Assembly (NCBI RefSeq): GCF_030684315.1
Contig: NC_081377.1
Location: forward strand, 1,922,001 to 1,986,000
Direction: 5' to 3'
Origin: Stegostoma tigrinum
Lineage: Eukaryota
Length of the DNA: 64,000 nucleotides
Within the stretch, counting starts at the first letter, position 1. Each line of letters begins with the position of its first letter. The position numbers and the translations under genes are program-made. Shown here piece after piece: positions 8,145-57,284 of the stretch. The notes below the pieces were generated by a model. That model was not told the origin of the DNA. It made no database searches and worked only from the letters and a program-made list of their open reading frames with translations.

Positions 8145-10420
8145 ATGGTATCAGTGCCAGCTGGCTAAGATAAATTGGGGAACATTACTTAAAAAGGATC
8201 TCAGTGGATGGGCAATGATAAATGTTTAAAAAGTGCATGAATGAACTGCAACAAGTGTTCATTCCCATCTGGCACAAAAAACACAAAAGGTGACCCGCCC
8301 AAGATTAGCAAAGGAATTCAGGGATAGCATTAGATCCAAGGAAGGGACCTAAAAATTGGCCAACAAAGCAGTAGACCTAAGAATTGGAAACGGCTTACAT
8401 TTCAGCAAGGGAGGAAAAAAGGATTGACTTGGGGGGGGGGGAGAAAGAAGGTTTGAGAATAAGTTTGCAGAGAACATACAGACTGCTTGTTAAAGCTTTT
8501 GTAGATATGTAAAAAGAATAAGTGTAGTGAAGACAAATGTAGGTCCTTTAACAGTCAGAAACAGAAAAGTTGAGGAACAAATACATGACAGGCCAATTAA
8601 ATACATACTTGAGTCTGTCGCCACAAAGGAGGACACAAAGAACATCCCAAAAACGTTGGGGAACATAGTGTCGAGACAGGGGCGAGCACAGGGTCTAGAG
8701 AGAGAGAGAACAACTGAACAAATTAGAATTAATAGGGAAATAGTCTTGGGAAATTTCTGTGAGTAACGCGAATAAATCCCTAGGGCTTGATGATCTACAT
8801 CCAAGAGTAGTTAACGAGGTGGCTCTTAGAAATATTGGGTGCGTGGAAGTTATCTTCCACAATACTAGAGAATCTAGAATGATCCTTATGGATTGGAAGG
8901 TAGTCAATGTAACCCCACTATTCGAAAATGTAGAGAGAAAACAGATAATTATAGACTGGTTAGCCTGACATCGGTGGTGAGAAAAATGCTAGAATCCATT
9001 GTAATATATTGAACAGAAGAGCACTTGGAAAACAGTGGCAGGATCAGATAGAGTCAGCATGGATTTACAAAGGGGAAATCATGCTTAAAGGTGTACTGAA
9101 AAATTGAAGATGTAACTAAGGGGGATAAGGGGAAAACCAGTGCATGTGGTTTACTTGGACTTTCAGAAAGCTTTCAATAAAGCTCCACATTAAAGATGAG
9201 CATATCAAATTAAAGCGTACTGAGTGGAGATGGTACCACTAAGATCTGTACTTGTACCTTCATTATTCACAATATATGATTGAGATGACCGAACGTTGTT
9301 TTCAAAAACAAGGCGGCAGATTATCTGAATGGTGATACATTGGGAAAGGTGCAACAAGACCTGGGTGCCCATCTACACTAGTCACTGAAAGTAATCAAGC
9401 AGTTGCAACAAATGGTATTTTGGCCTTCGCAGAGAGAAAGGATTCAAGTTCTGGAGCAGGGATGTTTTGTAATTGTATCCGGCTTTGGTGAGACCACACC
9501 TGGATTATTATGTGCAGTTTTGTTCTACTTATCCAAGGAAAGAGGTTCTTGCTGCGGAGGGAATGCAACAAAGGTTTATCAAACTAATTCCTAGGAAGCC
9601 AGGGCCAACATATGAAGACGGGGTACATTAAGACTATATTAACTGGTGTTTAGAAGAATATAAAGAGATCCCAAGGAAACCCATAAAATTCTAAAGGAGG
9701 TAGATGGGGTAAACACAGGAAGGATGTTTCCAGCAACAGAGGGGGTCACAGTTTAAGGATGCTGGTTAGGACAGAGATGAGGAGTAATTCTTCACCCAGA
9801 GAATAGCGAGTTCCTGTTTTGCAGTCCTGTCCATGCTCAAGAAGGAGCACACTGTGTTCACTGGCATGATACGGACCTTTAGAAACTGGTGGGCACCACA
9901 TCAGAGATAATAGGAACTGCAGATGCTGATGAATCCGAGAAAACAAGGTGTGGAGCTGGATGAACACAGCAAGCCAAGCAGCATCTTAGGAGCAGGAAAG
10001 CTGATGTATCGGGCCTCTAGGCTCCTAAGATGCTGCTTGGCCTGCTGTGTTCATCCAGCTCCACACCTTGTTATCTCGGCACCACATCATCACCCTGGCC
10101 ATTATTTTGACTTACTAAGTTTCCATTCACCCCAAGTAAGTTTCTGTTGACCATTAATCATTATTTTGTTATGGCCACACATTGTGGGCTAAATCCTTTT
10201 CATTTATTAACAATTTAAAACATGGAAATCTCTGCCACAACAAGAAAAGTTGAAGTCAATGCATTGAATGTTTTCAAAGGATTAGATACAGTTTTTAGGA
10301 CTAAAGGAATCAAAACACATGGGAGGTAGAGGGAACAGGGCTGAGATGGATGATCAATCATGACAAAGTTGAATGATGGATCAGAATAGAACTGTCAAAT
10401 GCTGCTATTTTCTGTGTTCC
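8145..10420 (+). mobile_element. Degenerate CR1 LINE (ORF2 RT region and tail)
   Basis: KSLGLDDLHPRV, DWKVVNVTPLF, SQHGFTKGKSCL and VVYLDFQKAF motifs with frameshifts. Confidence 0.85.
9904..10077. mobile_element. PLE-derived fold-back mini-element, family A
   Basis: Inverted arms; 12-bp TSD ggcaccacatca at 9892-9903 and 10078-10089; arms match the 3' end of the Neptune PLE at 36136-37445. Confidence 0.9.
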
Positions 10421-10619
10421 TCTGTACTATTTCCTGACTGGTTTCTAAACACAGGTTGATAACACCCAGCCAGCTCTAACTCACCACCTTTCAATGTTTG
10501 TGCTGTCCCTATATTGCAAACTACTTAACTGACATTGAGGGCAGTTTTTGCATACATTTCCTCAGATTAAATACAGCAAAAACTGAAGATACTGCCTTTG
10601 ACTCTTGGCTCAAAACCAG

Positions 10620-10747
10620 TTTTCTGAAGAAGGGTACTGACCCAAAACTTCAGCTTTCCTGCCCCTCTGATGCTGCCTGGCCTGCCGTGTTCCTCCAGCT
10701 TCACTGTGTTATCTCTGACTCCAGCATCTGCAGTTCATACCATCTCT
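10620..10747 (+). mobile_element. PLE 3' fragment, family A, with a degenerate hammerhead
   Basis: ctgaagaagggtactgacccaaaacttcag followed by the family-A 3' sequence. Confidence 0.75.
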
Positions 10748-11529
10748 GTTTCCATCTCTTCCTGTTACCATACTGTTCACAAATTCAAGGTTTGACCAAA
10801 ATGAATTTTAAAACATATGTCTGGCTGTCTCCAAGACTCATATAAAAGCACAGACGCTCAAAATCTGAAACAAACAGAACACTGCAGAAACTCAGCATGT
10901 CTGGCAGTATCTTTGGGAAGAGGAACATAGTTAACATTGAGTATAGTATGACTCATCTTCAGAATACTGTGCGTTTGTTCTAAGATTGCCTATTTTGATC
11001 TCTAACATTACCTGTTTCAATTCCTTGCCTAAATTTCTTCATCTTTCTAATTCAGTCCTAAGACAGTCCTTTAAATCTATCTCTTCGACAAAGCTATTAG
11101 TCATCTGATCTATTATCTCCTTAACTGTAGACAGAAAATTCTGAAAAGATTCAGGTCAGGCACCATCTGTGGAGACAGAATTAGAATCAATGCTTCAGAT
11201 CAATCACCTTTCATGAGAACAAAAGGTCATTTACTTGAAATGTTCACTTTGACCTCTCCGCAGAAGCCGAATGACCTGCCCAGTATTCCTGACACCCATC
11301 TTGTTTTTATTTCAGATTTCTAGAATCTGCATATTGTGCTTTTGTCAAAAACAGCTTTTAAGGCTTGGTATCATATTTTGTTTGAAAATGCCTTTTAATC
11401 TACTGGGATGTTTTATTATATTGAAGGTGCTATTTCAATACAAGTAATTAACATGCAGATACGATAAGCAATTATGAAGGCAAATTGGATGTTATCATAC
11501 ACTGTTTCCCTCTTCGCAGTGTAAGAGTA

Positions 11530-12065
11530 AGGAAGTCTGGGTGCAACTGTTTCCAGCTTTGATTAAACAGTACAGATTTGATTTTTGCCCATGTAAAAAT
11601 ACAGTTGTCTTACAGAAAATGTAAAGAAGATTCACAAGATTGATTTCTGGAACAAAGATGTTGTCCAATGAGGAGAGATCAAGTACATTATTCATTAGTT
11701 TTAGAAAAATTAGACATAAAATTCTAATTAAGCAAATTCTTAGAGAGATTGACGTGACAGGTAAATACAGCACATTTTCCTATCTGGAGAATTGAAAATT
11801 AAAAGGTCATAGTTTCAGGATAAGTGTGTGTCGGTTTAAAATTTAGTTGAGGAGAAATGCCTTCATTCAGTATTGTGCAACTTTAGCCTTCTCCACTCTA
11901 AAAGGTCTCTGGTGATACATACAAGACAGAAATTGACTAATTCTTGGACACTAAGGGAATGAAGACATTATGAGAAAGTAGAGTTGATGATGTAAAAGGT
12001 CAGCCACACTCTTACTAAATGACACAGCAGGCACTAGTGGCTGAATAGCCAGCTCTTGTTCTCAT
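11530..12065 (+). mobile_element. Old CR1 3' fragment
   Basis: RRFTRLI...NEER-like remnants and tail. Confidence 0.6.
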
Positions 12066-12321: not shown

Positions 12322-13112
12322 GAGATAACAAGGTGTGGAACTGGATGAACACAGCAGGCCAAGCAGCATCTCAGGAGCACAAAAGCTGACTTTTCAGGCC
12401 TAGACCCTTCAGAAAGGGGGATGGGGAGAGGGCTCTGAAATAAATAGGGAGAGAGGGGGAGGCAGACCAAAGATGGATAGAGGAGAAAATAGGTGGAGAG
12501 GAGAGTATAGGGGGGAGGTGATAGGTCAGTCCGGGGAGGACGGACAGGTCAAGGAGGCGGGATGAGGTCAGTAGGTGGGAAATGGAGGTGCTGCTTGAGG
12601 TGGGAGGAGGGGATAGGTGAGAGGAAGAACAGGTTAGGGAGGAGAGGGGGATGGGGAGTGGGTTCTGAAATAAGTAGGGAGAGAGGGGGAGACTGACCGA
12701 AGATGGATAGAGGAGAAGATGTGGAGAGGAGACAGACAAGTTAAAGAGGCGGGGATGGAGCCAGTTAAGGTGAGTATAGGTGGGGAGGTAGGGAGGAGAT
12801 AGGTCAGTCCAGGGAGGATGGACAGGTCAAGGGGGTGGGATGAGGTTAGTAGGAAGGAAATGGGGGTGCGGCTTGAAGTGGAATAAGGGGATAGGCAAAA
12901 GGAAGAACAGGTTAGGGTTGCGGGGACGAGTTTGGCTGGTTTTGGGAATGCGGTGGGGAGAAGGGGAGATTTTGAAGCTTGTGAAATCCACATTGATACC
13001 ATTGGGCTGCAGGGTTCCCAAGCAGGATGTGAGTTGCTGCTCCTGCAACCTTTGGCTGCAGGAGGCTTAGGATGGACATGTCGTCTGAGGAATGGGAGGG
13101 GGAGTTGAAATG
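12322..13112 (-). mobile_element. Neptune-type PLE 3' part (GIY-YIG C-terminus plus partly tandem-duplicated pLTR)
   Basis: Minus ORF remnant QEQQL..CLGTLQPNGINVDFTSFK; purine-rich pLTR occurs twice (12322-12636 and 12640-12915); degenerate hammerhead at 12385-12413. Confidence 0.85.
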
Positions 13113-13259
13113 ACTGATACTTAATTCCAAGAACTGCTGCCACTCTGTATACGTTTAATACACTATGGGTTTCAGCAGATTTCTTTTACCTTCATCAAGA
13201 TTTGCATGCTGACTGTCAGAGGTTGTTTTAAAATGCAAAGTTTGTTTTTGTTGCGAATA

Positions 13260-18375: not shown

Positions 18376-20651
18376 TAATTATGTTAAGGAAGCATTTGTA
18401 ATGCGACATCCTGTTCCCATGATCATAATTTCAATGTCAGATATTGAATCACAACTACAACCGATATGACTTTTATTTGCGAGTTCTCAGACAAACAAAC
18501 ATTTTTTTCAGTATGTTCCAAAAAGTAAATGGTCATTCAGTAATATGTGTTATTCTTACTCCCTATGCTTAGTGTAACCAGCAATTAAAACAAGTAGTCT
18601 TACAGAAAGGATGCAGTGGCCAGTGTTGAAGGGATTGTTGGGGGAAGAGGGCGAGAGCGAGATCAATGACATACATCAAAAATGAAATCTCAACAGCACA
18701 TCCTATTGTTGGCCACAACAACTATGTATATGTATTCACAATATTTGATGATACAACATTTCTATGTACACAATACTGTAGTGCTGCAGGGAGGTAGTGT
18801 ACACCGGTTTTGGCTGTAACCCTAGAAGATCATGCAAAGTAGTCAACAAACAGCAATTGGTAAAGCTCTTCTCTGCTTTCCAAAACACCAAATAGCTTGT
18901 AATAATGGGAAACAAAGCAATTTGGCATTTGAGGAAATGGGCCTATTTTAATTGCTGAGACAGGAAGACACCCAATCTCTGACTAAAAATAGACAGCTGA
19001 ATTTGTCACAAATGGCAGATCACTCCAGGAATTGGGACTTTCTATCACCATCTGGAAATATACCCTAGCCTTGGCAGTCCAGAACGCATGCAACCAAGGC
19101 ACTTCTGTATACTCTAATTTTGTTTATAAAATGTCAGAATGCTAACCATAAATATGTGAACCTGAAAGAAACACAAATGTAAACATTTAGAACAATGATA
19201 AAACATCATAAAGCAGTATACATCTTACATGTTTCTGCCCTCAAAGTACTGCACTAAAAAATGACATTTTTTTTTCCAGAAAAGCTTCTGAACAACTGGT
19301 GCTTCATCTCCTGTCTGTAAATTTATCTCCTCTAATTATTTTGCTTTATTGATTTGCTAACCATTTGATGGAGGAGCCCAATTGGAGAGAAGATACTGTG
19401 AAGTTTCATTCATCACTGTGAACGAGAAACTTCTATAAACACACTGCTCTCCTACCACAGAGAGAATTATAAGCCCAGTAAGAGGAGAAATTATCCCTTG
19501 GTCACCTTTTAAATAGTTGTCCCTGTCAAAAAGCAAAAACTTGGACACTGACTATCTATTTGCACCTGAAGCATGAACATTGTTACATTAACTTTGACAA
19601 TAAGAGCTACGCATGAGCAGTGAGATTATTTAACCTTAGTCAATTGTAGTCCGTTCTCAGTAAATGAATTAACCAGTCTTGATCAATATAAAATCTAATT
19701 GCAGTTTAATTTGTTACAGAGTAATCAAAGACCTGGGGCCTTTTGGGTAATACTCTTCTCATCTTACAGAATGTTGACAGTTTCAAACAGTAAGGTTAGT
19801 AATGCAGGCATCACTGTGAAGGAACTCAGTGAATATCATCCTTTCCACCCCTCTTCCCCACACCCTACCACTAAGAAAAAAAACTGGGCCAATCAGAATC
19901 AACAATATCAGAACGGCAGCAATATAAAGAGCTATGCCGTGGGAGGGTTTTGGACAGTGCCGGCACTTCCCAGAATAAAATGCTATCTTTGATTACTACA
20001 TTATAGCACTGCATGCCTCCAGATATGTGGTTGCTACTTACTGAAAATATTTTTATATTGCATTTAGCAACAAACTTATCCTGGCAATGTAAGAATTTCA
20101 TGCACAAGTATATTCTGACATTTTGTTAAAATGGTGGGTGCTGCAATGTAAATAATGAGGACATTATGTGGAACCAACAATAATGCAACAGAATCATGTG
20201 AAAGTTGAAGAAAAACAAAAGAACACTAACTCAAAGGCTTTGAGAGTCTGGGACTCTGAAGGGTTAGCTGAAATGTACTTGAGACAATTAATTGTTTCTG
20301 GAGATGGATCAGAGCAAGACCAAGAAACATTCCAAGAATGCTTGTAGATGGAGCTGATCGAAAACAAATGTCAATTGGACACAACAACTTATTTACCTTA
20401 TGATATCAATGTCCCCTTGTCTAATCTGGAAGAAACAAATGCCCTACACAGGCAATACTTCCTCTGTATTTAATAGGGAAATCTTAATTTTTGGAGGGAC
20501 ACCATTCTTAAAGATTAACATATATTCAGCACAATGGCAATGAGTTATACATCACAGTGTCTCCCAAAGAATTAATTCACATTGACGTGAATTATACATA
20601 GCTACTGTGATTCCGAACAACATGAAGTTTCAGACAGGTAAGACAAGGTAT

Positions 20652-20858
20652 GAAAACAGAAGTTGCTGGAAAAGCTCAGCAGGTCTGGCAACATCTGAGA
20701 AGGAAAAAACAGAGTCAGCATTTCGGGTCTAGTGACCCTTCTGAGGAACATTAACTGTGTTTTTTCCTTCACACATGCTGCCAGACCTGCTGAGGTTTTC
20801 CAGCAACTTCTGTTTTTGCTCCTGATTTACAGCATCTGCAATTCTTTTGGTTTTTATT
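20652..20858. mobile_element. PLE-derived fold-back mini-element, family B
   Basis: acagaagttgctggaaaagctcagcaggtctggca ... tgccagacctgctgaggttttccagcaacttctgt; hammerhead remnant at the apex. Confidence 0.8.
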
Positions 20859-25310: not shown

Positions 25311-25559
25311 GCTGTCCACCGATTCACGTCTCTTTTCATGCCAAATACTTATTAAATTGTGGTTAATGTTATTTTATAAGCAAATACAGCCATAACTTGC
25401 ATTTTGCAAAGTCCCACAAACAGCAAGGAGCATCAACCTAGATTACAGTCTGGGAGAACAGCTTAAACCCATGACTCTTCAGAGTTTGTGTGCGGTGAAC
25501 AAAGCCTATTTGACACTATGGAACATAATGCCAAGTTACCATAAACTATGAAACAGTTA

Positions 25560-25715
25560 CAAACTGCTGGAAAATCTCAGCAGGTCTGGCAGTATTTTGA
25601 CTGAAGAAGGGTCACTGGATCTGAAATGTTAACTCTGTTTCTGCCGGACCTGAGTTTTCCCAGCAATTTCTGATTTTGTTTTCCAATTTCCAGCATCTGC
25701 AGTTCTTTGGGTAAT
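25560..25715. mobile_element. PLE-derived fold-back mini-element, family B
   Basis: Inverted arms around ctgaagaagggtcactggatctgaaatgttaac (CpG-decayed hammerhead). Confidence 0.8.
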
Positions 25716-25885: not shown

Positions 25886-25913
25886 CCAGCATCTGCAGTT
25901 CCCATTATCACTG
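25886..25913 (+). mobile_element. 28-bp PLE 3'-tail-only insertion
   Basis: ccagcatctgcagttcccattatcactg matches the family-A 3' terminus; 11-bp TSD atacactcctt at 25875-25885 and 25914-25924. Confidence 0.8.
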
Positions 25914-27844
25914 ATACACTCCTTGCAGTACTTCTTTTCAACCTCCGGTGGCTGACTCCTTTGGCTCCAAGTTAGGACAGAGTAACTTTCTATTAGTTCT
26001 GTTGTGTGTGAGTTAATAGCTAATTGATTAGTTAAAAATCTGTCTATCTAAGTTTTGAATATACTTAAAAATCAAGCCCTCACAGTCCTCTGCGTTGAAT
26101 ACATGTCAATAAATAAACTTTTTCACATATTCACTATCCTCTGAGGTGAAATTCTTTCCTATCTGTATGTTAAAAGGGCAATCCCTTATTCTAAGATTAT
26201 GCTTCATTATCCTAGATTCTCCCACAATGGAAAACAACTTTTCCATATGTAAGCTGTTAGATCACCTAGGAGGGAGGATCAGCCCCTGACTTTTAAGTAT
26301 GAGAATGAAAAGAATGAATGAATGGACAAACTATGGTATAGAATGCCATCCAAGCAGGCATGAATGAAAAGGAACATAGTACCATTAAGAGGCAGTGTGG
26401 TCAGGGAGTGCGTACTGTTCTCTAAAGTGTGAACTGTAGGTAGAATCAGGAATAATGCACTTCTAAGATAGTCTGTACAGTCACGGCCCAAATCAATGTT
26501 ATCCGAGCAAGATGCCAATTTATATCAGCACAGGTTGAGCAAAGAATGCAAAGTACAGCTCAAGGAGAGGTGTGGGAAGAAGGTGGTTTCAATGTATGAG
26601 GTGCCAACATCAGTATTCATGGATGGATGAGCTATTCAGCTGGGATATGCTCCACTTAACAGTATTCTGGCGAGTCACAGAACTAAAATTGAGGACAGAG
26701 CTTTAAACTAGCAGTAGAGGGGTGAGGGAGTGGAGTGTTGGGAGAATCTGAAATCTGAAAAGCAATAAATATTGTAGTGATGCAATAAAGACAAAGTGAG
26801 GATGACCAAGAACTGAGTTGAACATAACTTGTACATCAGCAAATAAGGTAATTGCAAGAAACAGAGGTTATAAAAAAAATTGAAAGTTGATTGTCTAAAT
26901 GCATGAAGCATCTACAATACCATAGATGAACAAGTGGCACAAATAGACGGAGATCATTTAATCGCCAATTCAAAGACATGGTTGCAAGGTGTTCAATGTC
27001 AGGAAGTATTCTAGTATACAAAATATTTTGGAGATAGCCAGAATAGCAAGTGGAGAGGGGTAGCATTGAAAGTAAGGATGACACAAGAACATCAGTGAGA
27101 AAGTATCTTGTTTGAGAAGATCGTGAAGCAGAATCGGTGTAGGTGGAAATCAAAAAGCATTGTTGCGACATTTATAGACCCCTGCATCAGTAGGACAGAG
27201 TATTAAATTAGAAATCATTGGTGTTTGTAATAAAGGCAATGAATTAACTATGACAGACTTTATCTCCATATGGGTGATGATAACTAAATTGGCAAAAGTT
27301 GTCTAGAATCTTATGGTATTATGACAAGACGTGATGGAAGAATATTTTTAAGACAGATTTCAAAATCAGAAATTGCTGGGAAAACACAGGTCTGGCAGTA
27401 TCTGTGGAGGGAAAACAGAGTTAACATTTCAGATCCAGTGACCCTTCTTCAGTCAAAATACCGCCAGCCCTGCTGAGATTTTCCAGCAGTTTGTAACTGT
27501 TTCAAAGTTTATGGTAACTTGGCATTATGTTCCATAGTGTCAAATAGGCTTTGTTCACAGCACACAAACTCTGTAGAGTCATGGGTTTAAGCTGTTCTCC
27601 AAGACTGTAATCTAGGTTGATGCTCCTTGCTGTTTGTGGGACTTTGCAAAATGCAAATTATTGCGGTATTTGCTTACAAAATAACATTTAACAAACAATC
27701 TTAAAAGTAATATACATTATGTTACTAAGTAGGGTCAAAACTAACTTATATTTAGCACTGTGAAATGAGGCAAGGTTAATTAGTAATGTAATTTTTTTTC
27801 CATACACTGATGGGATAGCGACATCATGCCTGGCCAACTCATTA

Positions 27845-32354: not shown

Positions 32355-33167
32355 GAGAGAGGGAGATAATGGGAACTGCAGATGCTGGAGAATCCAAGAT
32401 AACAAAGTGTGAAGCTGGATGAACACAGCAGGCCAAGCAGCATGTCAGGAGCACAAAAGCTGACGTTTCGGGCCCAGACCCTTCTTCGGAGAGGGTTCTG
32501 GAATAAATAGCAAGAGAGAGGGAGGTGACTGAAGATGGAGAGAAAAGAAGATAGGTGGAGAGGAGAGTATAGGTGGGGAGGTAGGGAGGGGATAGGTCAG
32601 TCCAGGGAAGACGGACAGGTCAAGGAGGGAGGATGAGGTTAGTAGGTAGTCGCGAACCATTTTAACTCCCCCTCCCATTCCTTAGACGACATGTCCATCC
32701 TGGGCCTCCTGCAGTGCCACAATGATGCCACCCGAAGGTTGCAGGAACAGCAACTCATATTCTGCTTGGGAACCCTGCAGCCCAATGGTATCAATGTGGA
32801 CTTCACAAGCTTCAAAATCTCCCCCTCCCCCACTGCATCCCAAAACCAGCCCAGCTTGTCCCCGCCTCCCTAACCTGTTCTTCCTCTCACCTCAAGCCAT
32901 ACCTCCATTTCCTACCTACTAACTTCATTCCACCTCCTTGACCTGTCCGTCTTCCCTGGACTGACATATCCCCTCCCTACCTCCCCACCTATACTCTCCT
33001 CTCCACCTATCTTCTTTTCTCTCCATCTTCGGTCCGCCTCCCCCTCTCTCCCTATTTATTCCAGAACCCTCACCCCATCCCCCTCTCTGATGAAGGGTCT
33101 AGGCCCAAAACGTCAGCTTTTGTGCTCCTGAGATGCTGCTTGGCCTGCTGTGTTCGTCCAGCTTCAC
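32355..33167. mobile_element. Neptune-type PLE fold-back insertion (inverted pLTR, GIY-YIG C-terminus, pLTR)
   Basis: ORF 32691-32873 (RRLQEQQLIFCLGTLQPNGINVDF); inverted arms; TSD actta(t/c)aaaatgtt at 32341-32354 and 33168-33181. Confidence 0.9.
33085..33116 (+). ncRNA. Minimal hammerhead ribozyme, probably inactive (G12 to A)
   Basis: CTGATGA-A-GGGT-ctag-GCCC-aAAAC-GTC-AG. Confidence 0.65.
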
Positions 33168-33181
33168 ACTTACAAAATGTT

Positions 33182-36127: not shown

Positions 36128-36135
36128 TTTCAACA

Positions 36136-37445: not shown

Positions 37446-37457
37446 CAGTTTTCAACA

Positions 37458-46205: not shown

Positions 46206-46206
46206 T

Positions 46207-47070: not shown

Positions 47071-47278
47071 CTAGTCGGCATATACTGGTTGGGCCGAAGA
47101 GTCTGTTTCCATGCTGTATGACTCGAAGCCACCTCTCAACCTCCTATGCTCCAGTGAAAAAGTGCCAACCTATCCAGCCTTTGTTTATAACTCAAACCTC
47201 TATCGAGTTTTGAGAAGATTTGTAGCTCAGGTTGAGATTCTGGATGTGAGTTTGCTCGCTGAGCTGGAAGGTTAGTTT

Positions 47279-47318
47279 TCAGACGTTTCGTCACCATTCT
47301 AGGTAACATCATCAGTGA
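47279..47318 (-). ncRNA. Minimal type I hammerhead ribozyme, intact core
   Basis: Exact reverse complement of 48026-48065. Confidence 0.85.
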
Positions 47319-48025
47319 GCCTCTGACGAAGCGCTGGTGTTATGTCCCACTTTCTATTTATCTGGTTAGGTTTCCTTGGGTTGGTGATGTCATTTCCTGT
47401 TCTTTTTCTCAGGGAATGGTAGATTGGCTCCAAATCAATGTGTTTGTTGATGGAGTTCCGGTTGGAATGCCATGCTTCTAGGAATTCTCGTGCATGTCTC
47501 TGTTTGGCTTGTCCTAGGATGGATGTGCTGTCCCAATCAAAGTGGTGTCCTTCCTTACCTGTATGTAAGGATATGAGTGATAGTGGGTCATGTCGTTTTG
47601 TGGCTAGTTGATGTTCATGTATCCTGGCGGCTAGCTTTCTGCCAGTTTGTCCAATGACAAACACTACATTGGACAAACTGGCAGAAAGCTAGCCACCAGG
47701 ATACATGAACATCAACTAGCCACAAAACGACATGACCCACTATCACTCGTATCCTTACATACAGATAAGGAAGGACACCAGTTTGACTGGGACAACACAT
47801 CCATCCTAGGACAAGCCAAACCGAGACATGCACAAGAATTCCTAGAAGCATGGCATTCCAACCGGAACTCCATCAACAAACACATTGATTTGGAGCCAAT
47901 CTACCATCCCCTGAGAAAAAGAACAGGAAATGACATCACCAACGCAGGAAATGACATCACCAACCCAAGGAAACCTAACCAGATAAATAGAAAGCGGGAC
48001 ATAACACCAGCACTTCATCAGAGGC

Positions 48026-48065
48026 TCACTGATGATGTTACCTAGAATGGTGACGAAACGTCTGA
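48026..48065 (+). ncRNA. Minimal type I hammerhead ribozyme, intact core
   Basis: UCA-CUGAUGA-U-GUUACC-uagaau-GGUGAC-GAAAC-GUC^UGA: 3-bp stem I, 6-bp stem II, GUC cleavage triplet; overlaps the end of the GIY-YIG reading frame. Confidence 0.85.
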
Positions 48066-48309
48066 AAACTAACCTTCCAGCTCAGCGAGCAAACTCACAT
48101 TCAAACCTCTATACCCAGCAACATCCTGGTAAGTCTCTTCTGAACACTCTCCAGCTTAATAATAGCCTTCTGGGCAACAAGAACTGGACACAGTATTCCA
48201 GAAGTGGCCTCACTAATGTCCTGTACAACGTCAACATAATGTCCTAACTCCTATACTCAAAGGACTGAGCAATGAAGGCAAGCGTGTCAAATGTCTTTTT
48301 AAACGCAAC

Positions 48310-48535
48310 AAGAACAGAAGCTGCTGGAAGCTCAGCAGGTTTGGCACTATCTGTGAAGAAAAAGTTAGAGTTAAAGTTTTGGGTCCAGTGACCCTTCCTC
48401 AGAACAATTTTGAAGAAGGGTCACCGGACCCAAAACGTTAACTCTGATTTCTCCTCATAGAGGCTGCCAGACCTGCTGAGCTTCCAGCAACCTTTGTTTT
48501 TGTTCCTGATTTACAGCATCTGCAGTTCTCTCACA
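48310..48535. mobile_element. PLE-derived fold-back mini-element, family B, with two back-to-back decayed hammerheads
   Basis: gggtccagtgacccttcctcagaac ... tgaagaagggtcaccggacccaaaacgttaac. Confidence 0.85.
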
Positions 48536-48794: not shown

Positions 48795-50490
48795 GGGGGG
48801 AGGGTAGGAGAGATGGTGACAGGGGCTTATCATGATCGGCCCCTGGGAAGGGAGGAGCAGATAGGTGAGTAGGAAGATGGACAGTTTAGGGCAGGGCAGG
48901 GAGGTGAGGAGGAGGGGGAGGGTTGGACATGGGATAAGGCTGGGGGTGGAGGGATTTCTAAACTGGTGAAGTCAATGTTGACACCATTGGGCTGTAAGCT
49001 CCCAGGGTGAAATATCAGATGTTGTTCCTCCAGTTTATGTTTGGCCTCACTCTGATAATGGAGGAGGTCAAGGATGGACATGTCGTCAGGGGAGTGGGAG
49101 GGGGAATGTCGTCAGGGGAGTGGGAGGGGAATGAAAATGGATGGAAACCAGGAGGTTGGGTTGGTTGATGCATTCTGTATGCATCAACCAATCCAACCTC
49201 CCGGTTTCCATCCATTTTCATGGTCTCATGTTTTTGGTCTCCCCAGAGGGGAGACCACATCAGGAGCAACGAATACAGTAGATCAGGTTGGATGAAGTGC
49301 AGGCGAGTCTCTGCCAGATCTGGAGGGATTGTTTGGGGCCTCGGACAGAGGTGAGAGGGGAGGTGTAGGGGCAGGTGTTGCACCTCTTGTGGTTGTAGGG
49401 AAAGGTAACAGGTGTGATGGAGACATTGGTGGGAGTGTACAACTGATGAGGGAGTCACGGAATGATCGATCCTTGTAGAAAGTGGACAGGGGTGGGGAAG
49501 GAAAATATGTTTTTGGTTGTGGGATCTGATTGTAGGAGGTGAAAATGTTGGAGGATGATGCATTGGGTTCAGAAGTTGTTGGGGTGGCACACAAGGTATA
49601 AGGGGACTCAATCCTTATTGTTGTTGGGGAGAGTGGCAGGGGTGCAAGCAATGGAGGAGATGCGGTTGAGGGCATCCTTAATTACAGAAGAGGGAAAACT
49701 ACAGTCCCTAACTTAGGAGGATATCTGGGATGTCCTGGAGTAGAATGCCTCATTCTGAGAGGAGATGTGGCAGAGGATTTGGGAGTATGGGGCAACATTT
49801 TTTGCAGGAGGGTGGGTGAGAGGAGGTATAATCGATGTAGAGGTGTGAGTCAGCGGGTTTGAAGTGGGTATCAGTGCTGAGTCGGTTTCTGGAGATGGAC
49901 ATGGAGTGGTCCAGAAAGTGGGTGGGGGACAGGTGATAGTGTCAGTAATGGTCCAGATGAATCTTACAGCAGGGTGGAAGGTGTTGGTGAAGTTGTTGCA
50001 CTGCTCAAGTTCCTCACAGAAGCACGAGGCCGCACTGATATAGCAGAGAAAGAGATGAGGGATGGTACCAGTGTAGTTGTGGAAGAGGGACTGTTTCACA
50101 AATCCTACAAAGAGGCAGGCATGGCTCAGGCCCATATAGGTGTCCATGGTCACCTCTTTGGTTTGTTCATGTCCAGCTCTTCTTCCACCTCACCTTCCTG
50201 ACCTGACCTAACCTGTCCATCTTCCTACTCACCTTTCCACTCCACCCTTCCCACAGACCAAGCACAATAACCCCACCTGCCTCCCCCTAGCACCATGTCT
50301 CCTCCCTTCTCCCAGCAACGCTCTCCCCCTTTATTTACTCCTGGGCTCCCCTCCCCCTCCCCAGTCCTGACGAAAAGTTTTACCCAAAACGTTGACTTTC
50401 CTGCTCCTCTGATGTTAGCTGCCTTGCTGTGCTTTTCTAGCCTCACACCTATAGACTCTGACTTCCAGCATCTGCAGTCCCTATTGTTTC
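48795..50490 (-). mobile_element. Older Neptune-type PLE (minus arm 48795-50165 with RT and GIY-YIG; plus-strand pLTR arm 50168-50490) nested in a CR1
   Basis: MGLSHACLFVG, FHPAVRF, KRCNTC, SSNLIYCIRCS, KLEEQHLIFH.GSLQPNGVNIDF; decayed hammerhead at ~50363-50396. Confidence 0.88.
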
Positions 50491-51143
50491 CCTGTGGAAC
50501 ACAACTGGGGATAGGCCTCCACTACTAAAGCAATCCTCCACCATTACCCTCTGTCTCCTGCCATTAAGCCAAGTATGTACCCAATTGATAAACTTACCCT
50601 GAATCCTATGTGATTTAATTTTACTAATTAGTTTACAATGCGGAACCTGGTCAAAGGCTTTACTAAAATCCACATAAACAACACCTACTGCTCTGTCATC
50701 AGCAATCTTCATGGTAATTTCCTCAAAAACCTCAATCAAGTTTGTGAGACATGATTTTCCTCATGCAAAACCATGCTGACTATAAATTTTTGTTTCTCTA
50801 AATGTCCATAAATCCTATCCTTTTTAATCACCTCCAACAATTTACCCACAAGCAAAGTCAGACTCACAGGTCTACAGTCCCCTGGTTTTTCCTAAGTACC
50901 TTTCTTAAACAAAGGTAGAACATTAGCCACCCAACAGTCACCCATAGTTATAGATGATGCAGATATTACTGCACCTTGCTGTATGGCAGTAAGTTGAGTT
51001 AATCTCACACTTACACCATGTCGCAGCAGCTCATGTGGCAAACACTCTGCATGTGCAGCCATCAAGCAGCCATGTTTTAAAGTTTTAGGGGAGTCGTCCT
51101 CATCAAAGTCCACAGAGGTACCATATCAGCACAACAGATACCA

Positions 51144-51320
51144 ACAGGTCTGCCAGCATCTGTGAAGAGAAATCAGAGTTAACGTTTCGGGTCCAGTGAC
51201 CCTTCCTCAGACGCTAACTCTGATTTTCTCCTCCACAGATGCTGTCAGACCTGCTGAGCTTTTCCAGCGACTTCTGTTTTCGTTCCTGATTTACAGCATC
51301 CGTGGCGCTTTTGGCCTTTA
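51144..51320. mobile_element. PLE-derived fold-back mini-element, family B
   Basis: Inverted arms; acagatac repeated on both flanks. Confidence 0.8.
51178..51211 (-). ncRNA. Minimal hammerhead core (family B, GUU triplet); stem I cut by the fold-back junction
   Basis: Minus strand CUGAGGA-A-GGGUC-acug-GACCC-GAAAC-GUU^AAC. Confidence 0.65.
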
Positions 51321-51339
51321 TGACAGATACTGGTCTTCA

Positions 51340-53185: not shown

Positions 53186-53500
53186 AAAAATAGTCAAGGG
53201 CAGAAACCCAAGGGGATTGGCAATGATCAGATGTCTGGTCGGGGTGATCTCAGTCATGGCGGGGGTTTGGGGGGGTGGTGGGGTCATTCTCAGTCCTGGG
53301 TCTCCATAGCAGCCAATCCTGGTGGTAGGGCTAATGCAGTCAAGGAGACGCACAGTCCAGGGCCTGGGCATATTTTGCTGAAGTTTGAAGGTTATGATCT
53401 TTTGTGAGATGCCTGTATGGAGGCAGAGTTAGGTGTAGTATGCCCCTACGAGCATGAGGTAACAGAAGGTAGTCTTATCCCAGCGGAACATAACAGGTCA

Positions 53501-53647
53501 ACAAAGTGTGGAGCTGGATGAACACAGCAGGCCAAGCAGCATCTTAAGAGCTTTTGTGCTCCTGAGATGCTGCTTGTCCTGCTGTGTTCATCCAGCTCCA
53601 CACTTTGTTATCTTGGATTCTCCAGCATCTGCATTTCCCATTATCTC
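53501..53647. mobile_element. PLE-derived fold-back mini-element, family A
   Basis: Inverted arms; TSD ggaaca(t/c)aacaggtca at 53485-53500 and 53648-53663. Confidence 0.9.
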
Positions 53648-54177
53648 GGAACACAACAGGTCATTCACTTCCTTCCTGCACTGCTTGTAGTCCAGTTTGT
53701 GAGGACCACAGGCTCTGAATTGAGTTGCCCCTAGCCCCGTATCTGGCAGGTTTGGACAGTGACCGGGTATCATCCACTGGGAAAGGAACCTTGTCTCCTT
53801 TGTGACTCCATCTGAGAGAGTATGAAAGGAAGGGGCACTGAACCAAATGGTCCTGCTCCTCTGGGAGGCTTTTCTTAGCTCATGAGTATAACCCCCAAGG
53901 GTTCCTGGAAATCTCCACCTTAATTGAATGAAGCGGTGTCCAGGTGGCTTTCAAACATGGCACCATGACCCTTGACCCTAGAGGCTAGACAAGAATGACA
54001 TTCCTGACAGGTGATGCACCCAATCAGTCATACAACAGCAAAATAAGGTGAAAAATACATAATCACTCAAGAGAATGTGCCCAGGGCATTGGCAGATCTG
54101 AGATGCTCACTGTCATACTTTAACTTAAAAATCTTGGCCTAGTTTCAGAGTGTTGTAAACATGCCTCCTTAGTACTT

Positions 54178-54275
54178 GAGATAACAAGGTGTAGAGCTGG
54201 ATGAACACAGCAGGCCAAGCAGCATCAGAGGAGCAGGATGGCTGACGTTTTGGGCCTAGACCCTTCTTCAGAAAA
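54178..54275 (-). mobile_element. Family-A PLE fragment with a decayed hammerhead (54241-54271)
   Basis: gctgacgttttgggcctagacccttcttcag. Confidence 0.8.
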
Positions 54276-54319
54276 AAAAACAAAAAAAATGGCTGGGACG
54301 ATGTCTCTATGGCTTGACT

Positions 54320-54575: not shown

Positions 54576-54668
54576 CTGGAATAATATTGCCCAGTATTAC
54601 ACAGACAGCTTAATTCACACAGCTCTTTCATACTCTGCCTTGAATAAAACAGGGCTATCTTATCTGCA

Positions 54669-54844
54669 GAGATAGTAGGAACTGCTGATGCTGGAGAATC
54701 TTATATAACAAGGTGCAGAGTTGTATGAACACAGCAGGCCAAGCAAAATCAGAGGATGCCGGAAAATTAAATCTGAAACATCAGCTTTCCTGCTCCTCTG
54801 ATGCTGCTTGGCCTGCTGTGTTCATCCAGCTCTACACCTTGTTA
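54669..54844. mobile_element. PLE-derived fold-back mini-element, family A
   Basis: TSD tatcttat(c/t)tgca at 54656-54668 and 54845-54857. Confidence 0.88.
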
Positions 54845-55083
54845 TATCTTATTTGCACTTATGCATCTTCACAACTTTCCAAATGCATTACATGTAAATG
54901 CTGGTTTCAAAAATTTAGCAAGAGCTGAGTAACAGTCCAATAAAGTGGCTACTATCTTGAGTACTCCTGATTTCACAAGGACTGCTCCTCAGGGTTGGGC
55001 CTGCAGCTGTCTGTTGACAAAACATTGCTGTGTTTAATTTAACACAAAAGGTCGCTGCAATCCAGGAGCAACACAAACATGCT

Positions 55084-55420
55084 GAGATAGCAAGAACTGC
55101 AGATACTGGAGTCAGAGGTAGCAAACTGTGGAGCTGGAGGAACACAGCAGGCCAGGCAGCATCAGAGGAACAGGAAAGCTGATGTCTTCAGTTGGGACCC
55201 TTCTTCAGAAGGTCTGTTCCTCTGATGCTGCCAGGCCTGCTGTGTTCCTCCAGCTCCACAGTTTGCTACCTCTGACTCCAGCATCTGCAGTTGTTACTAT
55301 CTCAGCACGTTCAGAGGAACAGACCTTCTGAAGAAGGGTCCTGACCCGAAACGTCAGCTTTCCCATTCCTCTGATGCTGCCTGGCCTGCTGTGCTCCTTC
55401 AGCTCCACACTGTGTTATCG
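55084..55420. mobile_element. Double fold-back family-A PLE mini-element
   Basis: Hairpin ~55079-55310 followed by an inverted copy of the apex and a third arm. Confidence 0.88.
55326..55357 (+). ncRNA. Minimal hammerhead ribozyme, intact core
   Basis: CUGAAGA-A-GGGUC-cu-GACCC-GAAAC-GUC^AG. Confidence 0.7.
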
Positions 55421-56206
55421 CAAGCTTGCTGAAGTTCAGTATTCATGTTGCAATTTGGGGCAGGCCGCAGACAGATTTCAAGTTGAATTTTCATTATAGA
55501 GAACAGGAGAAAGGCTCTGAACTTGGTTTTCAAGTTGGTGACCCTTTCCCAACAAAGTGAGAGTCTGACTAAAAATAATCACAACTTTCACAATATTTGT
55601 GGTGTATGTTTTAACCCTGTTCAATTCAAGCCAATAGCAGTGAACACAAAAACGGGCCTTAGAGTCATGAAGGCATTGCCAGCATACACCATACTGGTTC
55701 ACTTCAGAAAAATCCAGAGGGAAGTGATGGGATAGTGGGTGCCAGTGCAAGCAATACTAACCTAACATTGAGGGATAGATGGGAAGGAGGATGCCCCTTC
55801 CCAGCAGGTTGGAGGAGATGACTGCTCTAAAAAGACGCAGTCGAGGGAGTACATCTTTCAGCCCTCCTGGAAGGGCTCAGGGCCTGCACCCTCCAGCATT
55901 ACAGCCATTTGTGAAGCAGCCTTGTGGGTGCTGCTGCTTCTGACTATGGGTGGGGCAGGAGAGGGAAGAGTAGCAAATTCATTGACTGACCTCCTTGGAC
56001 TGACTCACAGCCGTAGTGCTGTTGCTGTTTCTCCACTGAGCTGTGCACATTCTAATGATGAAGCACATGTAATAGTGGACACAGGAAGACAGTGGTGCTT
56101 TATCTTGGTCATCCAGGAGATGGTCCAGAGGGAGGAGCTGTGCCTCTCTGCTGAATTACCCCATCAAGCAGATGGTGATATGCATAAACAGAAAAGCGGA
56201 TGAGGA

Positions 56207-56313
56207 TAAAATTGAAGGGATGAAGGGTCTAGGCCCGAAACGTCAGCTTTTGTGCTCCTGAGATGCTGCTGGGCCTGCTGTGTTCATCCAGCCTCACATT
56301 TTATTATCTTATT
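56207..56313 (+). mobile_element. Family-A PLE mini-element starting inside the hammerhead
   Basis: gatgaagggtctaggcccgaaacgtcag; 14-bp TSD aaagcggatgagga at 56193-56206 and 56314-56327. Confidence 0.88.
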
Positions 56314-56496
56314 AAAGCGGATGAGGAGGCAGTCAAGTCTGCCCAAGTGGACCTGGTTATCATAGAGAGGGTAAAGTGATAATTGAGGTTCAGATCACTG
56401 CATCCTACCTCACAGTATTCCACACTGTAACACTGGGACATGCCAGCACTGTAAAAACTTCCTCCCTAAAGGCAAACTCACATCACCTCTTCTTGT

Positions 56497-56890
56497 GATA
56501 ACAACGTGTGAAGCTGAATGTTGACGTTTCGGGTCGAGACCCTTCTTCAGAAATGGGGGAGGGGAAGGGGATTCTGAAATAAATAGGGAGAGGGGGGAGG
56601 CGGATAGAAGATGGACAAAGGAGAAGATAGGGTGAGAGGAGACAGACAGGTTAAAGAGGTGAGGTTAGAGCCAGTGAAGGTGAATGTAGATGGGGAGTTA
56701 GGGAGGGGATATTTTGGGTCGAGATCCTTCTTCAGAAATGGGGGAGGGGAAGGGGATTCTGAAATAAATAGGGGGGGGGACAAGAAATGCCAACTTTCCT
56801 GCTCTCTTGATGCTGCTTACCCTGCTGTGTTCATCCAGCTTCACACCATGTAATCTCAGATTCTCCAGCATCGGCAGTTCCTACTATCTC
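56497..56890. mobile_element. Family-A PLE fold-back insertion with tandem inverted pLTR pieces
   Basis: 12-bp TSD acctcttcttgt at 56485-56496 and 56891-56902. Confidence 0.88.
56521..56552 (-). ncRNA. Minimal hammerhead ribozyme, intact core
   Basis: Minus strand UU-CUGAAGA-A-GGGUC-uc-GACCC-GAAAC-GUC^AA. Confidence 0.7.
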
Positions 56891-57282: not shown

Positions 57283-57284
57283 TT

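What the first reader, a model, noticed from the sequence alone, without database searches (positions are those of the whole stretch)
9904..56890. A population of hammerhead-linked, fold-back Penelope-derived mini-retroelements with 11-16 bp TSDs
Seen: about 15 insertions from three sequence families (A Neptune-like, B, and Poseidon-like). Most have two inverted arms, and the apex of the short ones lies in or beside a minimal hammerhead motif. Clear TSDs flank 9904, 25886, 32355, 36136, 47204, 53501, 54669, 56207 and 56497. Many are only 100-230 bp and non-coding, so they look like MITEs but derive from PLE 3' ends. Established: PLE pLTRs carry minimal hammerheads and PLE insertions often have an inverted pLTR. 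Inference: in this genome the process makes a high-copy class of ribozyme-delimited hairpin elements (about one per 4 kb here). These are either abortive integrations or non-autonomous, retrozyme-like elements.
Basis: partly seen in the sequence, partly recalled or inferred. Interest (0 to 1): 0.85.

Follow-up and report, generated by a model that had tools for sequence, protein, structure and literature searches.

The report
Fold-back Penelope retrotransposon stubs in shark
The window is peppered with short, often hairpin-shaped remnants of Penelope-like retrotransposons whose inner ends pile up at the element's small hammerhead ribozyme; they are real insertions, but their architecture is the one already described for this class, so it is mostly ordinary, with one testable twist.

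Summary
I count 21 Penelope-like-element (PLE) insertions, 13.7% of the window, from at least three families. Twelve are fold-backs. All nine claimed target-site duplications (TSDs) check out: 11-17 bp, against 6 of 400 random site pairs scoring as well. Two independent runs of a related species carry an exact empty site with one TSD copy at 53501.

Long family-A copies encode the C-terminal GIY-YIG endonuclease of a Neptune-type PLE just upstream of the repeat. There are 5 intact minimal hammerhead cores against 0 expected by chance. 3' ends fall at two fixed points about 33 nt apart, the known PLE "tail".

Of 20 arm inner ends within 180 nt of the ribozyme, all 20 lie from -38 to +17 of the cut site. 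Nine of 10 fold-backs carry a tail on exactly one arm (P=0.011).

High 5' truncation, an adjacent inverted 5'-truncated copy, a one-sided tail and a minimal hammerhead are all published PLE hallmarks. The best reading is therefore per-insertion template switching during target-primed reverse transcription, not retrozymes or MITEs. Apex junctions differ between independent loci. One complex copied 7 nt of flank in inverted orientation.

A self-propagating short element is not excluded. Another first-stage note (s1-881875) describes the same architecture elsewhere in this genome.

The parts
9904..10078 (.). Family A fold-back, 175 bp. The left arm (- sense) runs from -13 to the +100 tail end. 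The right arm (+ sense) runs from +10 to the +66 no-tail end. TSD GCACCACATCA.
   Evidence: folds as a -123 kcal/mol hairpin, z -20.5
10618..10747 (+). Family A single arm, from the hammerhead 5' border (about -33) to the tail end. No TSD found.
10851..10975 (-). Old, diverged B-like single arm with a decayed hammerhead.
11140..11331 (.). Old, diverged B-like fold-back.
   Evidence: read by eye
12322..13130 (-). Family A long single copy: endonuclease C-terminal coding remnant, CT-rich UTR with an internal partial duplication, hammerhead, then the no-tail 3' end.
20648..20857 (.). Family B fold-back. The left arm runs from -32 to the no-tail end and the right arm from about -8 to the tail end. 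9-bp TSD TAAGACAAG.
25346..25712 (+). Family B copy with about 250 bp of extra upstream sequence, a short inverted piece (+17 to +57) fused to the hammerhead 5' border, and a tail. It is 95% identical to 27361-27709.
25886..25913 (+). Family A tail-only insertion (28 bp, +73 to +100) inside the 11-bp TSD ATACACTCCTT.
27361..27709 (-). Sister copy of 25346-25712 with the same internal junction, ending at the no-tail site.
32363..33171 (.). Family A fold-back, 809 bp. The left arm (-) has 287 bp and a tail. The right arm (+) has 514 bp, starts in endonuclease C-terminal coding sequence and ends at +55. TSD ACTTAyAAAATGTT.
36136..37445 (+). Family A 5'-truncated copy, 1.3 kb: RT-thumb/linker, CX4CX2C motif, GIY motif, an internal deletion, UTR, hammerhead, tail. 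TSD CAGTTTTCAACA.
47206..48103 (.). Family C fold-back, 898 bp. Arms are about 440 bp and 96-97% complementary. The apex (10-nt loop) lies at the YIG motif of the endonuclease. Each arm has an intact hammerhead near its outer end. The tail is on the left arm only. TSD TCAAACCTCTAT.
48307..48535 (.). Family B fold-back with two divergent CpG-decayed hammerheads. The apex lies at both 5' borders. The tail is on the right arm only.
48795..50490 (.). Old family-A-like fold-back. The long - arm carries ORF remnants (50043 down to 49250, and the endonuclease C-terminus at 49105 down to 48941). The short + arm (50168-50490) has a hammerhead and tail.
51142..51300 (.). Family B fold-back. The left arm has an intact hammerhead core (51181-51210, - strand). 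The right arm starts at about -5.
   Evidence: sharp genome-wide boundary at 51211
53500..53647 (.). Family A fold-back, 148 bp. The right arm starts at +1, the predicted cleavage site, and has a tail. The left arm runs from +10 to +62. 16-17-bp TSD. The insertion is absent from the related organism B.
   Evidence: (records 23 and 29 join 53488 to 53652)
54177..54274 (-). Family A single arm, from the hammerhead 5' border to the no-tail end. No TSD found.
54668..54848 (.). Family A fold-back, 181 bp. The left arm runs from +3 to the tail end and the right arm from -7 to the no-tail end. TSD TATCTTATyTGCA. Its right end is present in organism B.
   Evidence: (record 30)
55076..55422 (.). Family A three-arm zig-zag. 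Arm 1 (-) and arm 2 (+) both have tails, and their symmetry extends 7-8 nt into the left flank. Arm 3 (+, intact hammerhead at 55328-55355) is a reverse copy of arm 1 plus the apex junction.
56209..56314 (+). Family A single arm, 106 bp, from about -30 to the no-tail end, inside the perfect 14-bp TSD AAAGCGGATGAGGA.
56497..56890 (.). Family A fold-back, 394 bp. The left arm (-) has an intact hammerhead core (56523-56550), an internal deletion and a partial duplication, and ends at the no-tail site. The right arm (+) runs from about -8 to the tail end. Perfect 14-bp TSD TCACCTCTTCTTGT.

Best explanation
These are ordinary integration products of endonuclease-encoding Penelope-like retrotransposons. 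At least three families are present, and family A is of Neptune type. They accumulated in an elasmobranch genome both before and after its split from a relative that differs by about 6-9% in unique DNA.

Shown:
- Each copy sits in a 9-17-bp target-site duplication.
- Each copy ends at one of two fixed 3' points about 33 nt apart (the 'tail').
- Each copy carries a minimal type-I hammerhead 66 or 100 nt from that end.
- About half the insertions carry an inverted partner arm.
- Arm inner ends either lie far upstream or cluster within the hammerhead zone.

Inferred mechanism:
1. The element's GIY-YIG endonuclease makes staggered nicks.
2. Reverse transcription starts inside the RNA at one of the two start sites.
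3. cDNA synthesis frequently ends at or in the hammerhead. The possible reasons are an RNA 5' end there (a cleaved end at +1, or a transcript end at about -35) or a roadblock from the ribozyme-protein complex.
4. The polymerase then switches template to nascent DNA, or a second cDNA is primed on the other nicked strand. Either route builds the inverted arm.

The short hairpins are therefore dead-on-arrival by-products made anew at each insertion. They are not a separate hairpin transposon.
For: PLE identity:
- The ORF piece 36271-36975 hits 136 proteins, with E down to 2e-79. They come mostly from rays and sharks and include sea-cucumber proteins named 'GIY-YIG domain-containing'.
- Full-coverage homologues carry Pfam GIY-YIG exactly where the query is cut, and one carries RVT_1 upstream.
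- 32652-32810 aligns at 55% identity to the last 53 residues of such a protein.
- The family C apex encodes the YIGQTGRKL motif.

TSDs and the empty site:
- TSDs are verified at nine sites.
- Two runs of a related species, from different studies, join window 53488 directly to 53652. That removes the element plus one TSD copy.

3' ends and tail:
- 3' ends fall at +66/67 or +99/100, matching the two RT start sites and 30-40-nt tail of PLEs (PMC11167929, PMC8557442).
- 9 of 10 fold-backs have the tail on exactly one arm (P=0.011).

Hammerhead:
- Five intact cores occur against 0 expected.
- They show the extra base after A9, the G10.1-C11.1 pair and the loopless palindromic C-G helix III that define PLE minimal hammerheads (PMC4209133).

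Junctions made per insertion:
- Independent loci have different apex junctions.
- In the 55076-55422 complex the inverted symmetry runs 7-8 nt into host flank, and the third arm reproduces the first junction in reverse. This shows DNA-templated copying.

Continuum and clustering:
- Fold-backs range from 148 bp to 1.7 kb, with the apex anywhere from the cut site to the endonuclease or RT-thumb coding region.
- 20 of 20 inner ends within 180 nt of the cut lie between -38 and +17.
- Published biochemistry shows a PLE protein nicks and extends both target strands (PMC11167929).
Against: - No full-length PLE, and no PLE-type RT core, lies in the window. Descent from an autonomous master is inferred from partial copies.
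- The sample is small: 30 arms. Arms shorter than about 25 nt would escape detection.
- A sharp genome-wide boundary just 5' of the hammerhead, followed by heterogeneous AT-rich flank (thousands of contigs), looks more like a defined element terminus than like random truncation.
- 25346-25712 and 27361-27709 are 95% identical. They share an internal inverted junction and differ by the tail, as if a junction-bearing template was copied twice.
- 13 contigs of the same species share a junction of the type 'inverted arm fused to the hammerhead 5' border' (joint 53544 to 56219).
- Which switch operates is not resolved. Self-primed snap-back fits the near-symmetric family C hairpin and the flank copy at 55076. 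Two independent primings fit the canonical outer ends of both arms.
Confidence: 0.72

Rival explanations
1. A self-propagating non-autonomous short element, SINE-like. The unit runs from about -35 (just 5' of the hammerhead) to the internal RT start site, with or without a hairpin. It is transcribed from its own copies and mobilised in trans by PLE protein. Because reverse transcription starts internally, 3' flank is never carried along. The hairpin forms are variants that can themselves be recopied.
For: - Very high abundance of exactly this short unit in three related organisms. Summed contig depth is 1e5-1e6 on PLE bins against 10-40 on unique bins.
- Thousands of contigs stop matching 1 nt 5' of the CUGA box at 51211, or about 8 nt 5' of it at 56219, and continue into unrelated AT-rich sequence (agreement 0.37-0.41).
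- 9 of 20 short arms in the window start at -38 to -25.
- The sister copies 25346/27361 share a junction but differ by the tail.
- 13 contigs share one junction type.
- In vitro, the RNA needed for PLE priming is only the short region around the RT start sites (PMC11167929).
Against: - No promoter was identified, and there is no tRNA-like head (ARAGORN finds 0 genes).
- Loose ends at 51211 are partly forced by the reference locus, whose own arm ends there.
- Independent fold-backs in the window have different junctions.
- Many copies are truncated elsewhere (+1, +3, -7, -13, tail only).
- Long copies show the same 3' region is simply part of the PLE.
Confidence: 0.2
2. Retrozyme-like elements. 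Hammerhead-bounded units are cut out of a multimeric transcript, circularised, and reverse-transcribed from the circle.
For: Non-LTR retrozymes are reported to be related to PLE pLTRs and to occur in one cartilaginous fish (bioRxiv 10.64898/2026.07.22.740005). Two tabulated arms start within 3 nt of the predicted cut site (53549 at +1, 54668 at +3), and by my own reading of the apex sequences two family B arms may also start within a few nt of it.
Against: - No head-to-tail arrays of hammerhead units exist in the window.
- Units are not bounded by two same-strand hammerheads.
- Most short hairpins lack the CUGANGA half, or the whole ribozyme.
- In a hairpin transcript the ribozyme would be locked in a stem of -96 to -123 kcal/mol.
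- 3' ends are RT start sites, not cleavage sites.
Confidence: 0.04
3. MITE-type DNA transposons, or assembly or library palindrome artefacts.
For: Terminal inverted symmetry, small size, and flanking direct repeats.
Against: - TSD length varies from 9 to 17 bp.
- The arms are asymmetric, with a 33-nt tail on one side only.
- The arms are homologous to PLE 3' regions.
- The arms have diverged by 3-19%.
- The flanks of two elements are found in another species' independent reads, and a third element has a clean empty site there.
Confidence: 0.02

Closest known systems
Canonical EN+ Penelope-like element insertions (Evgen'ev & Arkhipova 2005; Arkhipova 2006; Craig et al. 2021, PMC8557442)
   Same: Heavy 5' truncation, an inverted 5'-truncated copy abutting the forward copy, a 30-40-bp tail at one end only, variable TSDs, a hammerhead in the pLTR, and a GIY-YIG endonuclease with a CX2-5CxxC linker (Neptune type).
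   Different: Here the extreme short end dominates (100-230-bp hairpins, even a 28-bp tail-only insertion), and inner ends cluster at the ribozyme. I found no statement of that clustering in the papers I read.
Minimal hammerheads of PLEs (Cervera & de la Pena 2014, PMC4209133)
   Same: The CUGANGA and GAAA boxes, an unpaired base after A9, the G10.1-C11.1 pair, and a loopless palindromic helix III implying dimer action. Most motifs are solitary in truncated PLEs, and pairs on opposite strands 100-700 bp apart were noted.
   Different: Three shark families with distinct helix II sequences. Helix I is barely detectable (2-3 bp). No activity data.
In vitro mechanism of the Anolis Poseidon element PAc (Frangieh et al. 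2024, PMC11167929)
   Same: Two internal RT start sites that explain the tail, AT-rich targets, both target strands nicked and extended, and a hammerhead cut site roughly 90 nt upstream of the RT start (66-100 nt here).
   Different: That study found hammerhead cleavage dispensable and saw no RNA ends at the cut site. The genomic fossils here include a few arms that begin at or within 3 nt of it.
Non-LTR retrozymes (Cervera & de la Pena 2020, PMC7229834; Li et al. 2026 preprint)
   Same: Non-coding, hammerhead-bearing and PLE-related, with long TSDs.
   Different: Retrozymes are direct tandem repeats processed to circular RNA. These are inverted or single copies ending at RT start sites.
L1 5' inversion by twin priming (my own knowledge: Ostertag & Kazazian 2001; categories in PMC2912911)
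   Same: A second priming or switch during target-primed reverse transcription gives an inverted 5' segment inside one TSD.
   Different: In L1 the inverted piece is a different, more 5' part of the RNA. Here both arms are the same sequence, forming a true palindrome.

Membership tests
EN+ Penelope-like element (Neptune type) | C-terminal GIY-YIG endonuclease with cysteines between GIY and YIG, plus an upstream CX2-5CxxC linker motif | tested here: met
   36271-36975 translates to ...CNHRKCYTC...NVVYCIRCSRC.... Homologues with E down to 2e-79 carry Pfam GIY-YIG at the aligned continuation. The endonuclease C-terminus at 32652-32810 is 55% identical to the homologue's end. The motif rule is from PMC8557442. 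Pfam did not hit the window fragments themselves.
EN+ Penelope-like element (Neptune type) | PLE/telomerase-like reverse transcriptase core | tested here: inconclusive
   Only the post-RT (thumb/linker) part is present in the window. One homologue has RVT_1 upstream. The only RT core in the window (43872-44711) sits beside CR1-type LINE sequence, not PLE.
EN+ Penelope-like element (Neptune type) | Insertion anatomy: 5' truncation, adjacent inverted 5'-truncated copy, 30-40-bp tail at one end, variable TSD | tested here: met
   The tail is about 33 nt, sits on one arm in 9 of 10 fold-backs, and TSDs are 9-17 bp.
PLE minimal hammerhead (type I, dimer-acting) | CUGANGA and GAAA boxes, helix II closed by G10.1-C11.1, an extra base after A9, palindromic 15.2-16.2 with no loop 3, and a UH cleavage triplet | tested here: met
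   5 exact cores against 0 expected. Helix II differs between families but stays paired: GGGU/ACCC or GGGU/GCCC in A, GGGUC/GACCC in B, GUUACC/GGUGAC in C.
PLE minimal hammerhead (type I, dimer-acting) | Helix I of 4-5 bp formed by the flanks | tested here: inconclusive
   Only 2-3 contiguous pairs can be drawn in any family. Single arms fold no better than shuffles, z -0.5 to -1.2.
PLE minimal hammerhead (type I, dimer-acting) | Self-cleavage | not testable with these tools
   No Rfam hammerhead model matches, even at E<=10. Activity needs a bench assay.
Non-LTR retrozyme | Two or more direct tandem units, each with a hammerhead, so that a unit-length RNA can be excised | tested here: not met
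   No such arrays were found by Tandem Repeats Finder or self-BLAST. Hammerheads are single, partial or on opposite strands.
MITE / DNA transposon | Fixed-length TSD and terminal inverted repeats related to a transposase-encoding element | tested here: not met
   TSD lengths are 9, 11, 11, 12, 12, 12, 12, 14, 14 and 16-17 bp. The arms are unequal and are PLE sequence.
SINE | A pol III-type head (tRNA, 5S or 7SL) and a LINE-derived tail | tested here: not met
   ARAGORN finds no tRNA-like sequence in the window, and Rfam finds no 5S or 7SL match. Another internal promoter is not excluded.

The most novel reading that the evidence does not exclude
The inner ends of these arms are a fossil record of where PLE cDNA synthesis stops in vivo. 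They show two discrete stops. One is at the hammerhead cut site (+1 to +3). The other is just 5' of the ribozyme (about -35).

If this holds genome-wide, it would be the first in vivo evidence that the PLE hammerhead, or the RNP built on it, shapes the template RNA during retrotransposition. It would also mean that the resulting 100-135-nt unit, with or without a hairpin, has become a self-propagating, very high-copy non-autonomous element in sharks.
Probability: 0.25. Interest if true: 0.65.

Novelty: new member of a known kind. Interest (0 to 1): 0.4.

Why it matters
The role of the hammerhead in Penelope-like elements is an open question. The one biochemical study found cleavage dispensable in vitro and saw no RNA ends at the cut site (PMC11167929).

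A genome holding on the order of 1e4-1e5 short PLE stubs (a rough figure from contig depth) is a natural experiment. A histogram of arm 5' ends against the cut site, family by family, would show whether the ribozyme or its protein complex terminates templates in vivo.

The fold-backs also record template switching. The evidence is one tail per hairpin, and flank copied in inverted orientation. This bears on how the complex tandem and inverted PLE structures arise.

On the practical side, these hairpins break short-read contigs, draw sub-threshold miRNA-precursor matches in Rfam, and make up about 14% of this window. Annotating them matters for shark genome work. Otherwise the finding fits known PLE biology.

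Tried and rejected
- Rfam at gathering threshold and at E<=10 gave no hammerhead, only sub-threshold miRNA-precursor hits on the hairpins. These are generic stem matches.
- Pfam on the window's own ORF fragments gave no GIY-YIG hit. Identity had to be shown through homologues.
- I tried to collect more copies from public collections. A hammerhead pattern in viral contigs gave 0 hits. A 20-mer in metagenome contigs gave 2 chance hits with no similarity to the window.
The 5'-end statistics therefore rest on 30 arms plus the top rows of one read-laying run.
- Arm-to-arm identity (81-97%) is no higher than identity between copies. It cannot tell one template from two.
- My whole-palindrome alignment mixed loops with arms, and I did not use it.
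- The 'opposite strands' joint at 51170/51234 is an alignment ambiguity between similar arms. It is not a recurrent fold-back.
- I found no microhomology at the 9904 apex. At 53501 a 3-nt AGC/GCT overlap is compatible with self-priming.
- The MITE, retrozyme, tRNA-SINE and artefact readings were considered and rejected (see the membership tests).

Full report
**What is there**

The window has no N runs. It is rich in short repeats that pair as inverted arms. Mapping them on natural reference copies shows three families. The references were family A, window 36976-37441, and family B, window 48408-48535.

All three families share one layout. A minimal hammerhead comes first. About 66 nt downstream lies one possible 3' end. 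About 33 nt further lies a second possible 3' end.

I count 21 insertions between 9904 and 56890. They total 8.75 kb, which is 13.7% of the window, or one per 2.2 kb. Twelve are fold-backs. Two carry a short inverted piece. Seven are single arms. One (25886-25913) is only the 28-bp terminal piece.

**Are they insertions?**

Only 6 of 400 random position pairs scored 10 or more. Lengths run from 11 to 17 bp. A further 9-bp TSD flanks 20653.

Public runs gave direct proof for one element. Contigs of a related species ('organism B') come from two different studies. Each joins window 53488 directly to 53652. That omits 163 nt, which equals the 148-bp hairpin plus one copy of its 16-bp TSD (records 23 and 29). 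Unique DNA of the two species differs by about 6-9% in those records.

A third contig of organism B runs unbroken from 54827 to 55108. The right end of the 54669 element and the left end of the 55084 complex are therefore older than the split (record 30). The families were thus active both before and after that split.

**Are they Penelope-like?**

Long family-A copies continue upstream of the hammerhead through about 330 bp of CT-rich sequence into coding remnants.

- The piece 36271-36975 has 136 database homologues, with E down to 2e-79. Most are from rays and sharks. Some are sea-cucumber proteins named as GIY-YIG domain proteins.
- The full-coverage homologues carry Pfam GIY-YIG just where the window copy is interrupted. 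One has an RT domain upstream.
- The start of the forward arm at 32652-32810 aligns at 55% identity to the last 53 residues of such a protein.
- The family-A remnant has a CX4CX2C motif ahead of the GIY motif, with two cysteines after it. Craig et al. (PMC8557442) give this as the Neptune/Nematis signature that Penelope/Poseidon lack. 'Neptune-like' is therefore reasonable.
- The family C hairpin (47206-48103) encodes the YIGQTGRKL motif onward on both strands from its apex. Its clade could not be tested.
- No PLE-type RT core is in the window. The one RT hit (43872-44711) lies among CR1-type LINE fragments.

**The hammerhead**

Rfam models do not detect it. This is expected for the PLE 'minimal' type, which lacks a helix III loop. 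The core pattern CTGANGA-N10-22-GAAACGTY occurs five times against none in 100 shuffles.

The copies show the published hallmarks (PMC4209133):

- an unpaired base after A9;
- a G10.1-C11.1 closing pair;
- a C-G palindrome in place of helix III;
- a helix II that differs between families yet stays paired.

Most other copies are decayed, chiefly at CpG. Helix I is at best 2-3 bp. Single arms fold no better than shuffled sequence. Activity is unknown.

**3' ends and the tail**

Arm outer ends fall at +66/67 or +99/100 from the predicted cut. The 33-nt difference corresponds to the PLE 'tail'. Frangieh et al. (PMC11167929) traced the tail to two internal RT start sites. Twelve tails are found against 0.01 expected by chance.

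In 9 of 10 fold-backs exactly one arm has the tail (P=0.011 if arms were independent). Single arms split 4 to 4. This matches, and puts a number on, the published remark that the tail is often present at only one end (PMC8557442).

Loose-end consensus in the read data shows AT-rich flanks. That fits the known target preference.

**Where the arms end inside**

Thirty arms were placed relative to the cut (tally).

| Inner end relative to cut | Arms |
|---|---|
| more than 180 nt upstream | 9 |
| -180 to -39 | 0 |
| -38 to -25 (5' border of the ribozyme) | 9 |
| -24 to -14 | 0 |
| -13 to +3 (helix III and cut site) | 7 |
| +8 to +17 | 4 |
| tail only (+73) | 1 |

All 20 arms within 180 nt of the cut lie in the 56-nt ribozyme zone. 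Only 53549 (+1) and 54668 (+3) sit within 3 nt of the cut.

Arms shorter than about 25 nt would be missed, and the sample is small. The gap between -39 and -180 cannot be a detection effect.

The read data agree in part. Thousands of contigs in three organisms stop matching 1 nt 5' of the CUGA box of family B (51211), or about 8 nt 5' of it in family A (56219). They run on into heterogeneous AT-rich sequence. The 51211 boundary is partly imposed by the reference locus. The low agreement of what follows (0.37) argues that most copies really end there.

**How the hairpins form**

Independent fold-backs have different junctions:

- Family A: -13|+10, +1|+10, +3|-7, -33|+8, about -250|-8, -290|-510.
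- Family B: -32|-8, -32|-30, -30|-5.
- Family C: -440|-440.

Sizes form a continuum from 148 bp to 1.7 kb.

The 55076-55422 complex is the most informative. The symmetry of its first two arms runs 7-8 nt past the tail into host flank. Its third arm is a reverse copy of arm 1 plus the first junction. At least there, the partner arm was copied from DNA rather than from a second RNA. The near-equal 440-nt arms of family C point the same way.

The canonical outer ends of both arms fit two primings better, one on each nicked strand. That has been seen in vitro (PMC11167929). I cannot decide between these variants.

In a transcript the hairpins would fold at -96 to -123 kcal/mol (z -16 to -20). Most lack half or all of the ribozyme. 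They are therefore not self-cleaving units.

**Hints of heritable junctions**

- 25346-25712 and 27361-27709 are 95% identical. They share about 250 bp of upstream sequence and the same inverted-piece junction. One ends with the tail and the other without. No TSDs were found for either, so a local duplication is not excluded.
- Thirteen contigs of the same species share a joint of the type 'inverted arm fused to the ribozyme's 5' border'.

These hints keep alive, at about 20%, the reading that a short unit has become a trans-mobilised element in its own right. No tRNA-like head exists.

**Comparison with what is known**

The following are all published for PLEs (PMC8557442, PMC4209133, PMC11167929):

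- heavy 5' truncation;
- an adjacent inverted 5'-truncated copy;
- a one-sided 30-40-bp tail;
- variable TSDs;
- a minimal hammerhead;
- paired hammerheads on opposite strands 100-700 bp apart;
- solitary motifs from truncated copies.

Retrozymes (PMC7229834; preprint 10.64898/2026.07.22.740005) require direct tandem units, which are absent here. MITEs require a fixed TSD length, which is not met.

What I did not find stated in the papers I read:

- the clustering of 5' ends at the ribozyme;
- the numerical one-tail rule;
- the sheer dominance of sub-250-bp hairpins.

**Limits**

- The census rests on one 64-kb window and one read-laying run.
- Collection scans found no further copies.
Natural copies served as coordinate references.

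**Earlier notes of this scan**

Other first-stage notes describe the same architecture elsewhere in this genome (s1-881875) and describe parts of this window (s1-882215, s1-882249, s1-882305, s1-882306). I treated them as leads only.

**Verdict**

These are new members of a known kind. The 5'-end clustering is a worthwhile question for a genome-wide test.

Noticed in passing
window 34453-34714 and 35866-36127: A perfect (100%) 262-bp inverted repeat with a 1151-bp spacer. The right copy ends 8 nt before the family A insertion at 36136, inside its TSD (36124-36135). Perfect identity beside an old, decayed PLE copy is odd. It may be a recent templated event, gene conversion or an assembly issue.
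   Followed up: no
window 49131-49221: A 91-nt palindrome (92% complementary) lies inside the old PLE copy at 48795-50490. It draws sub-threshold miRNA-precursor matches in Rfam. Next to it, at 49080-49133, is a 26-bp unit repeated twice.
   Followed up: no
window 62376-63517: A tandem array of a 29-bp unit, about 35 copies at 88% match. A related short stretch lies at 61856-61963.
   Followed up: no
window 43872-44711, 44028-44832 / 46218-47033, 45675-45860 / 48101-48278: LINE fragments. They include an RT ORF (Pfam RVT_1, E 1e-7) and CR1-type C-terminal coding remnants, some in inverted pairs. They are not PLE.
   Followed up: partly
window 985-1156 and 1622-1793: A 172-bp direct repeat at 99.4% identity, with copies 637 bp apart. 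Nature unknown.
   Followed up: no
window 27842-28666, 52129-53183, 57282-58299: Another repeat family of about 0.8-1 kb at 73-81% identity. It lies in both orientations around the PLE cluster and gives high-agreement loose ends in the read data (52952, 52989, 53120). Probably a LINE or other transposon. Not classified.
   Followed up: no
window 42329-42538: A 27-bp (81-bp higher-order) tandem repeat, about 7 copies at 75-80% match.
   Followed up: no
window 36976 (copy 36136-37445): This family A copy has an internal deletion. It joins the GIY motif region directly to the last codons of the endonuclease. The ORF remnant also has at least two in-frame stops upstream.
   Followed up: partly
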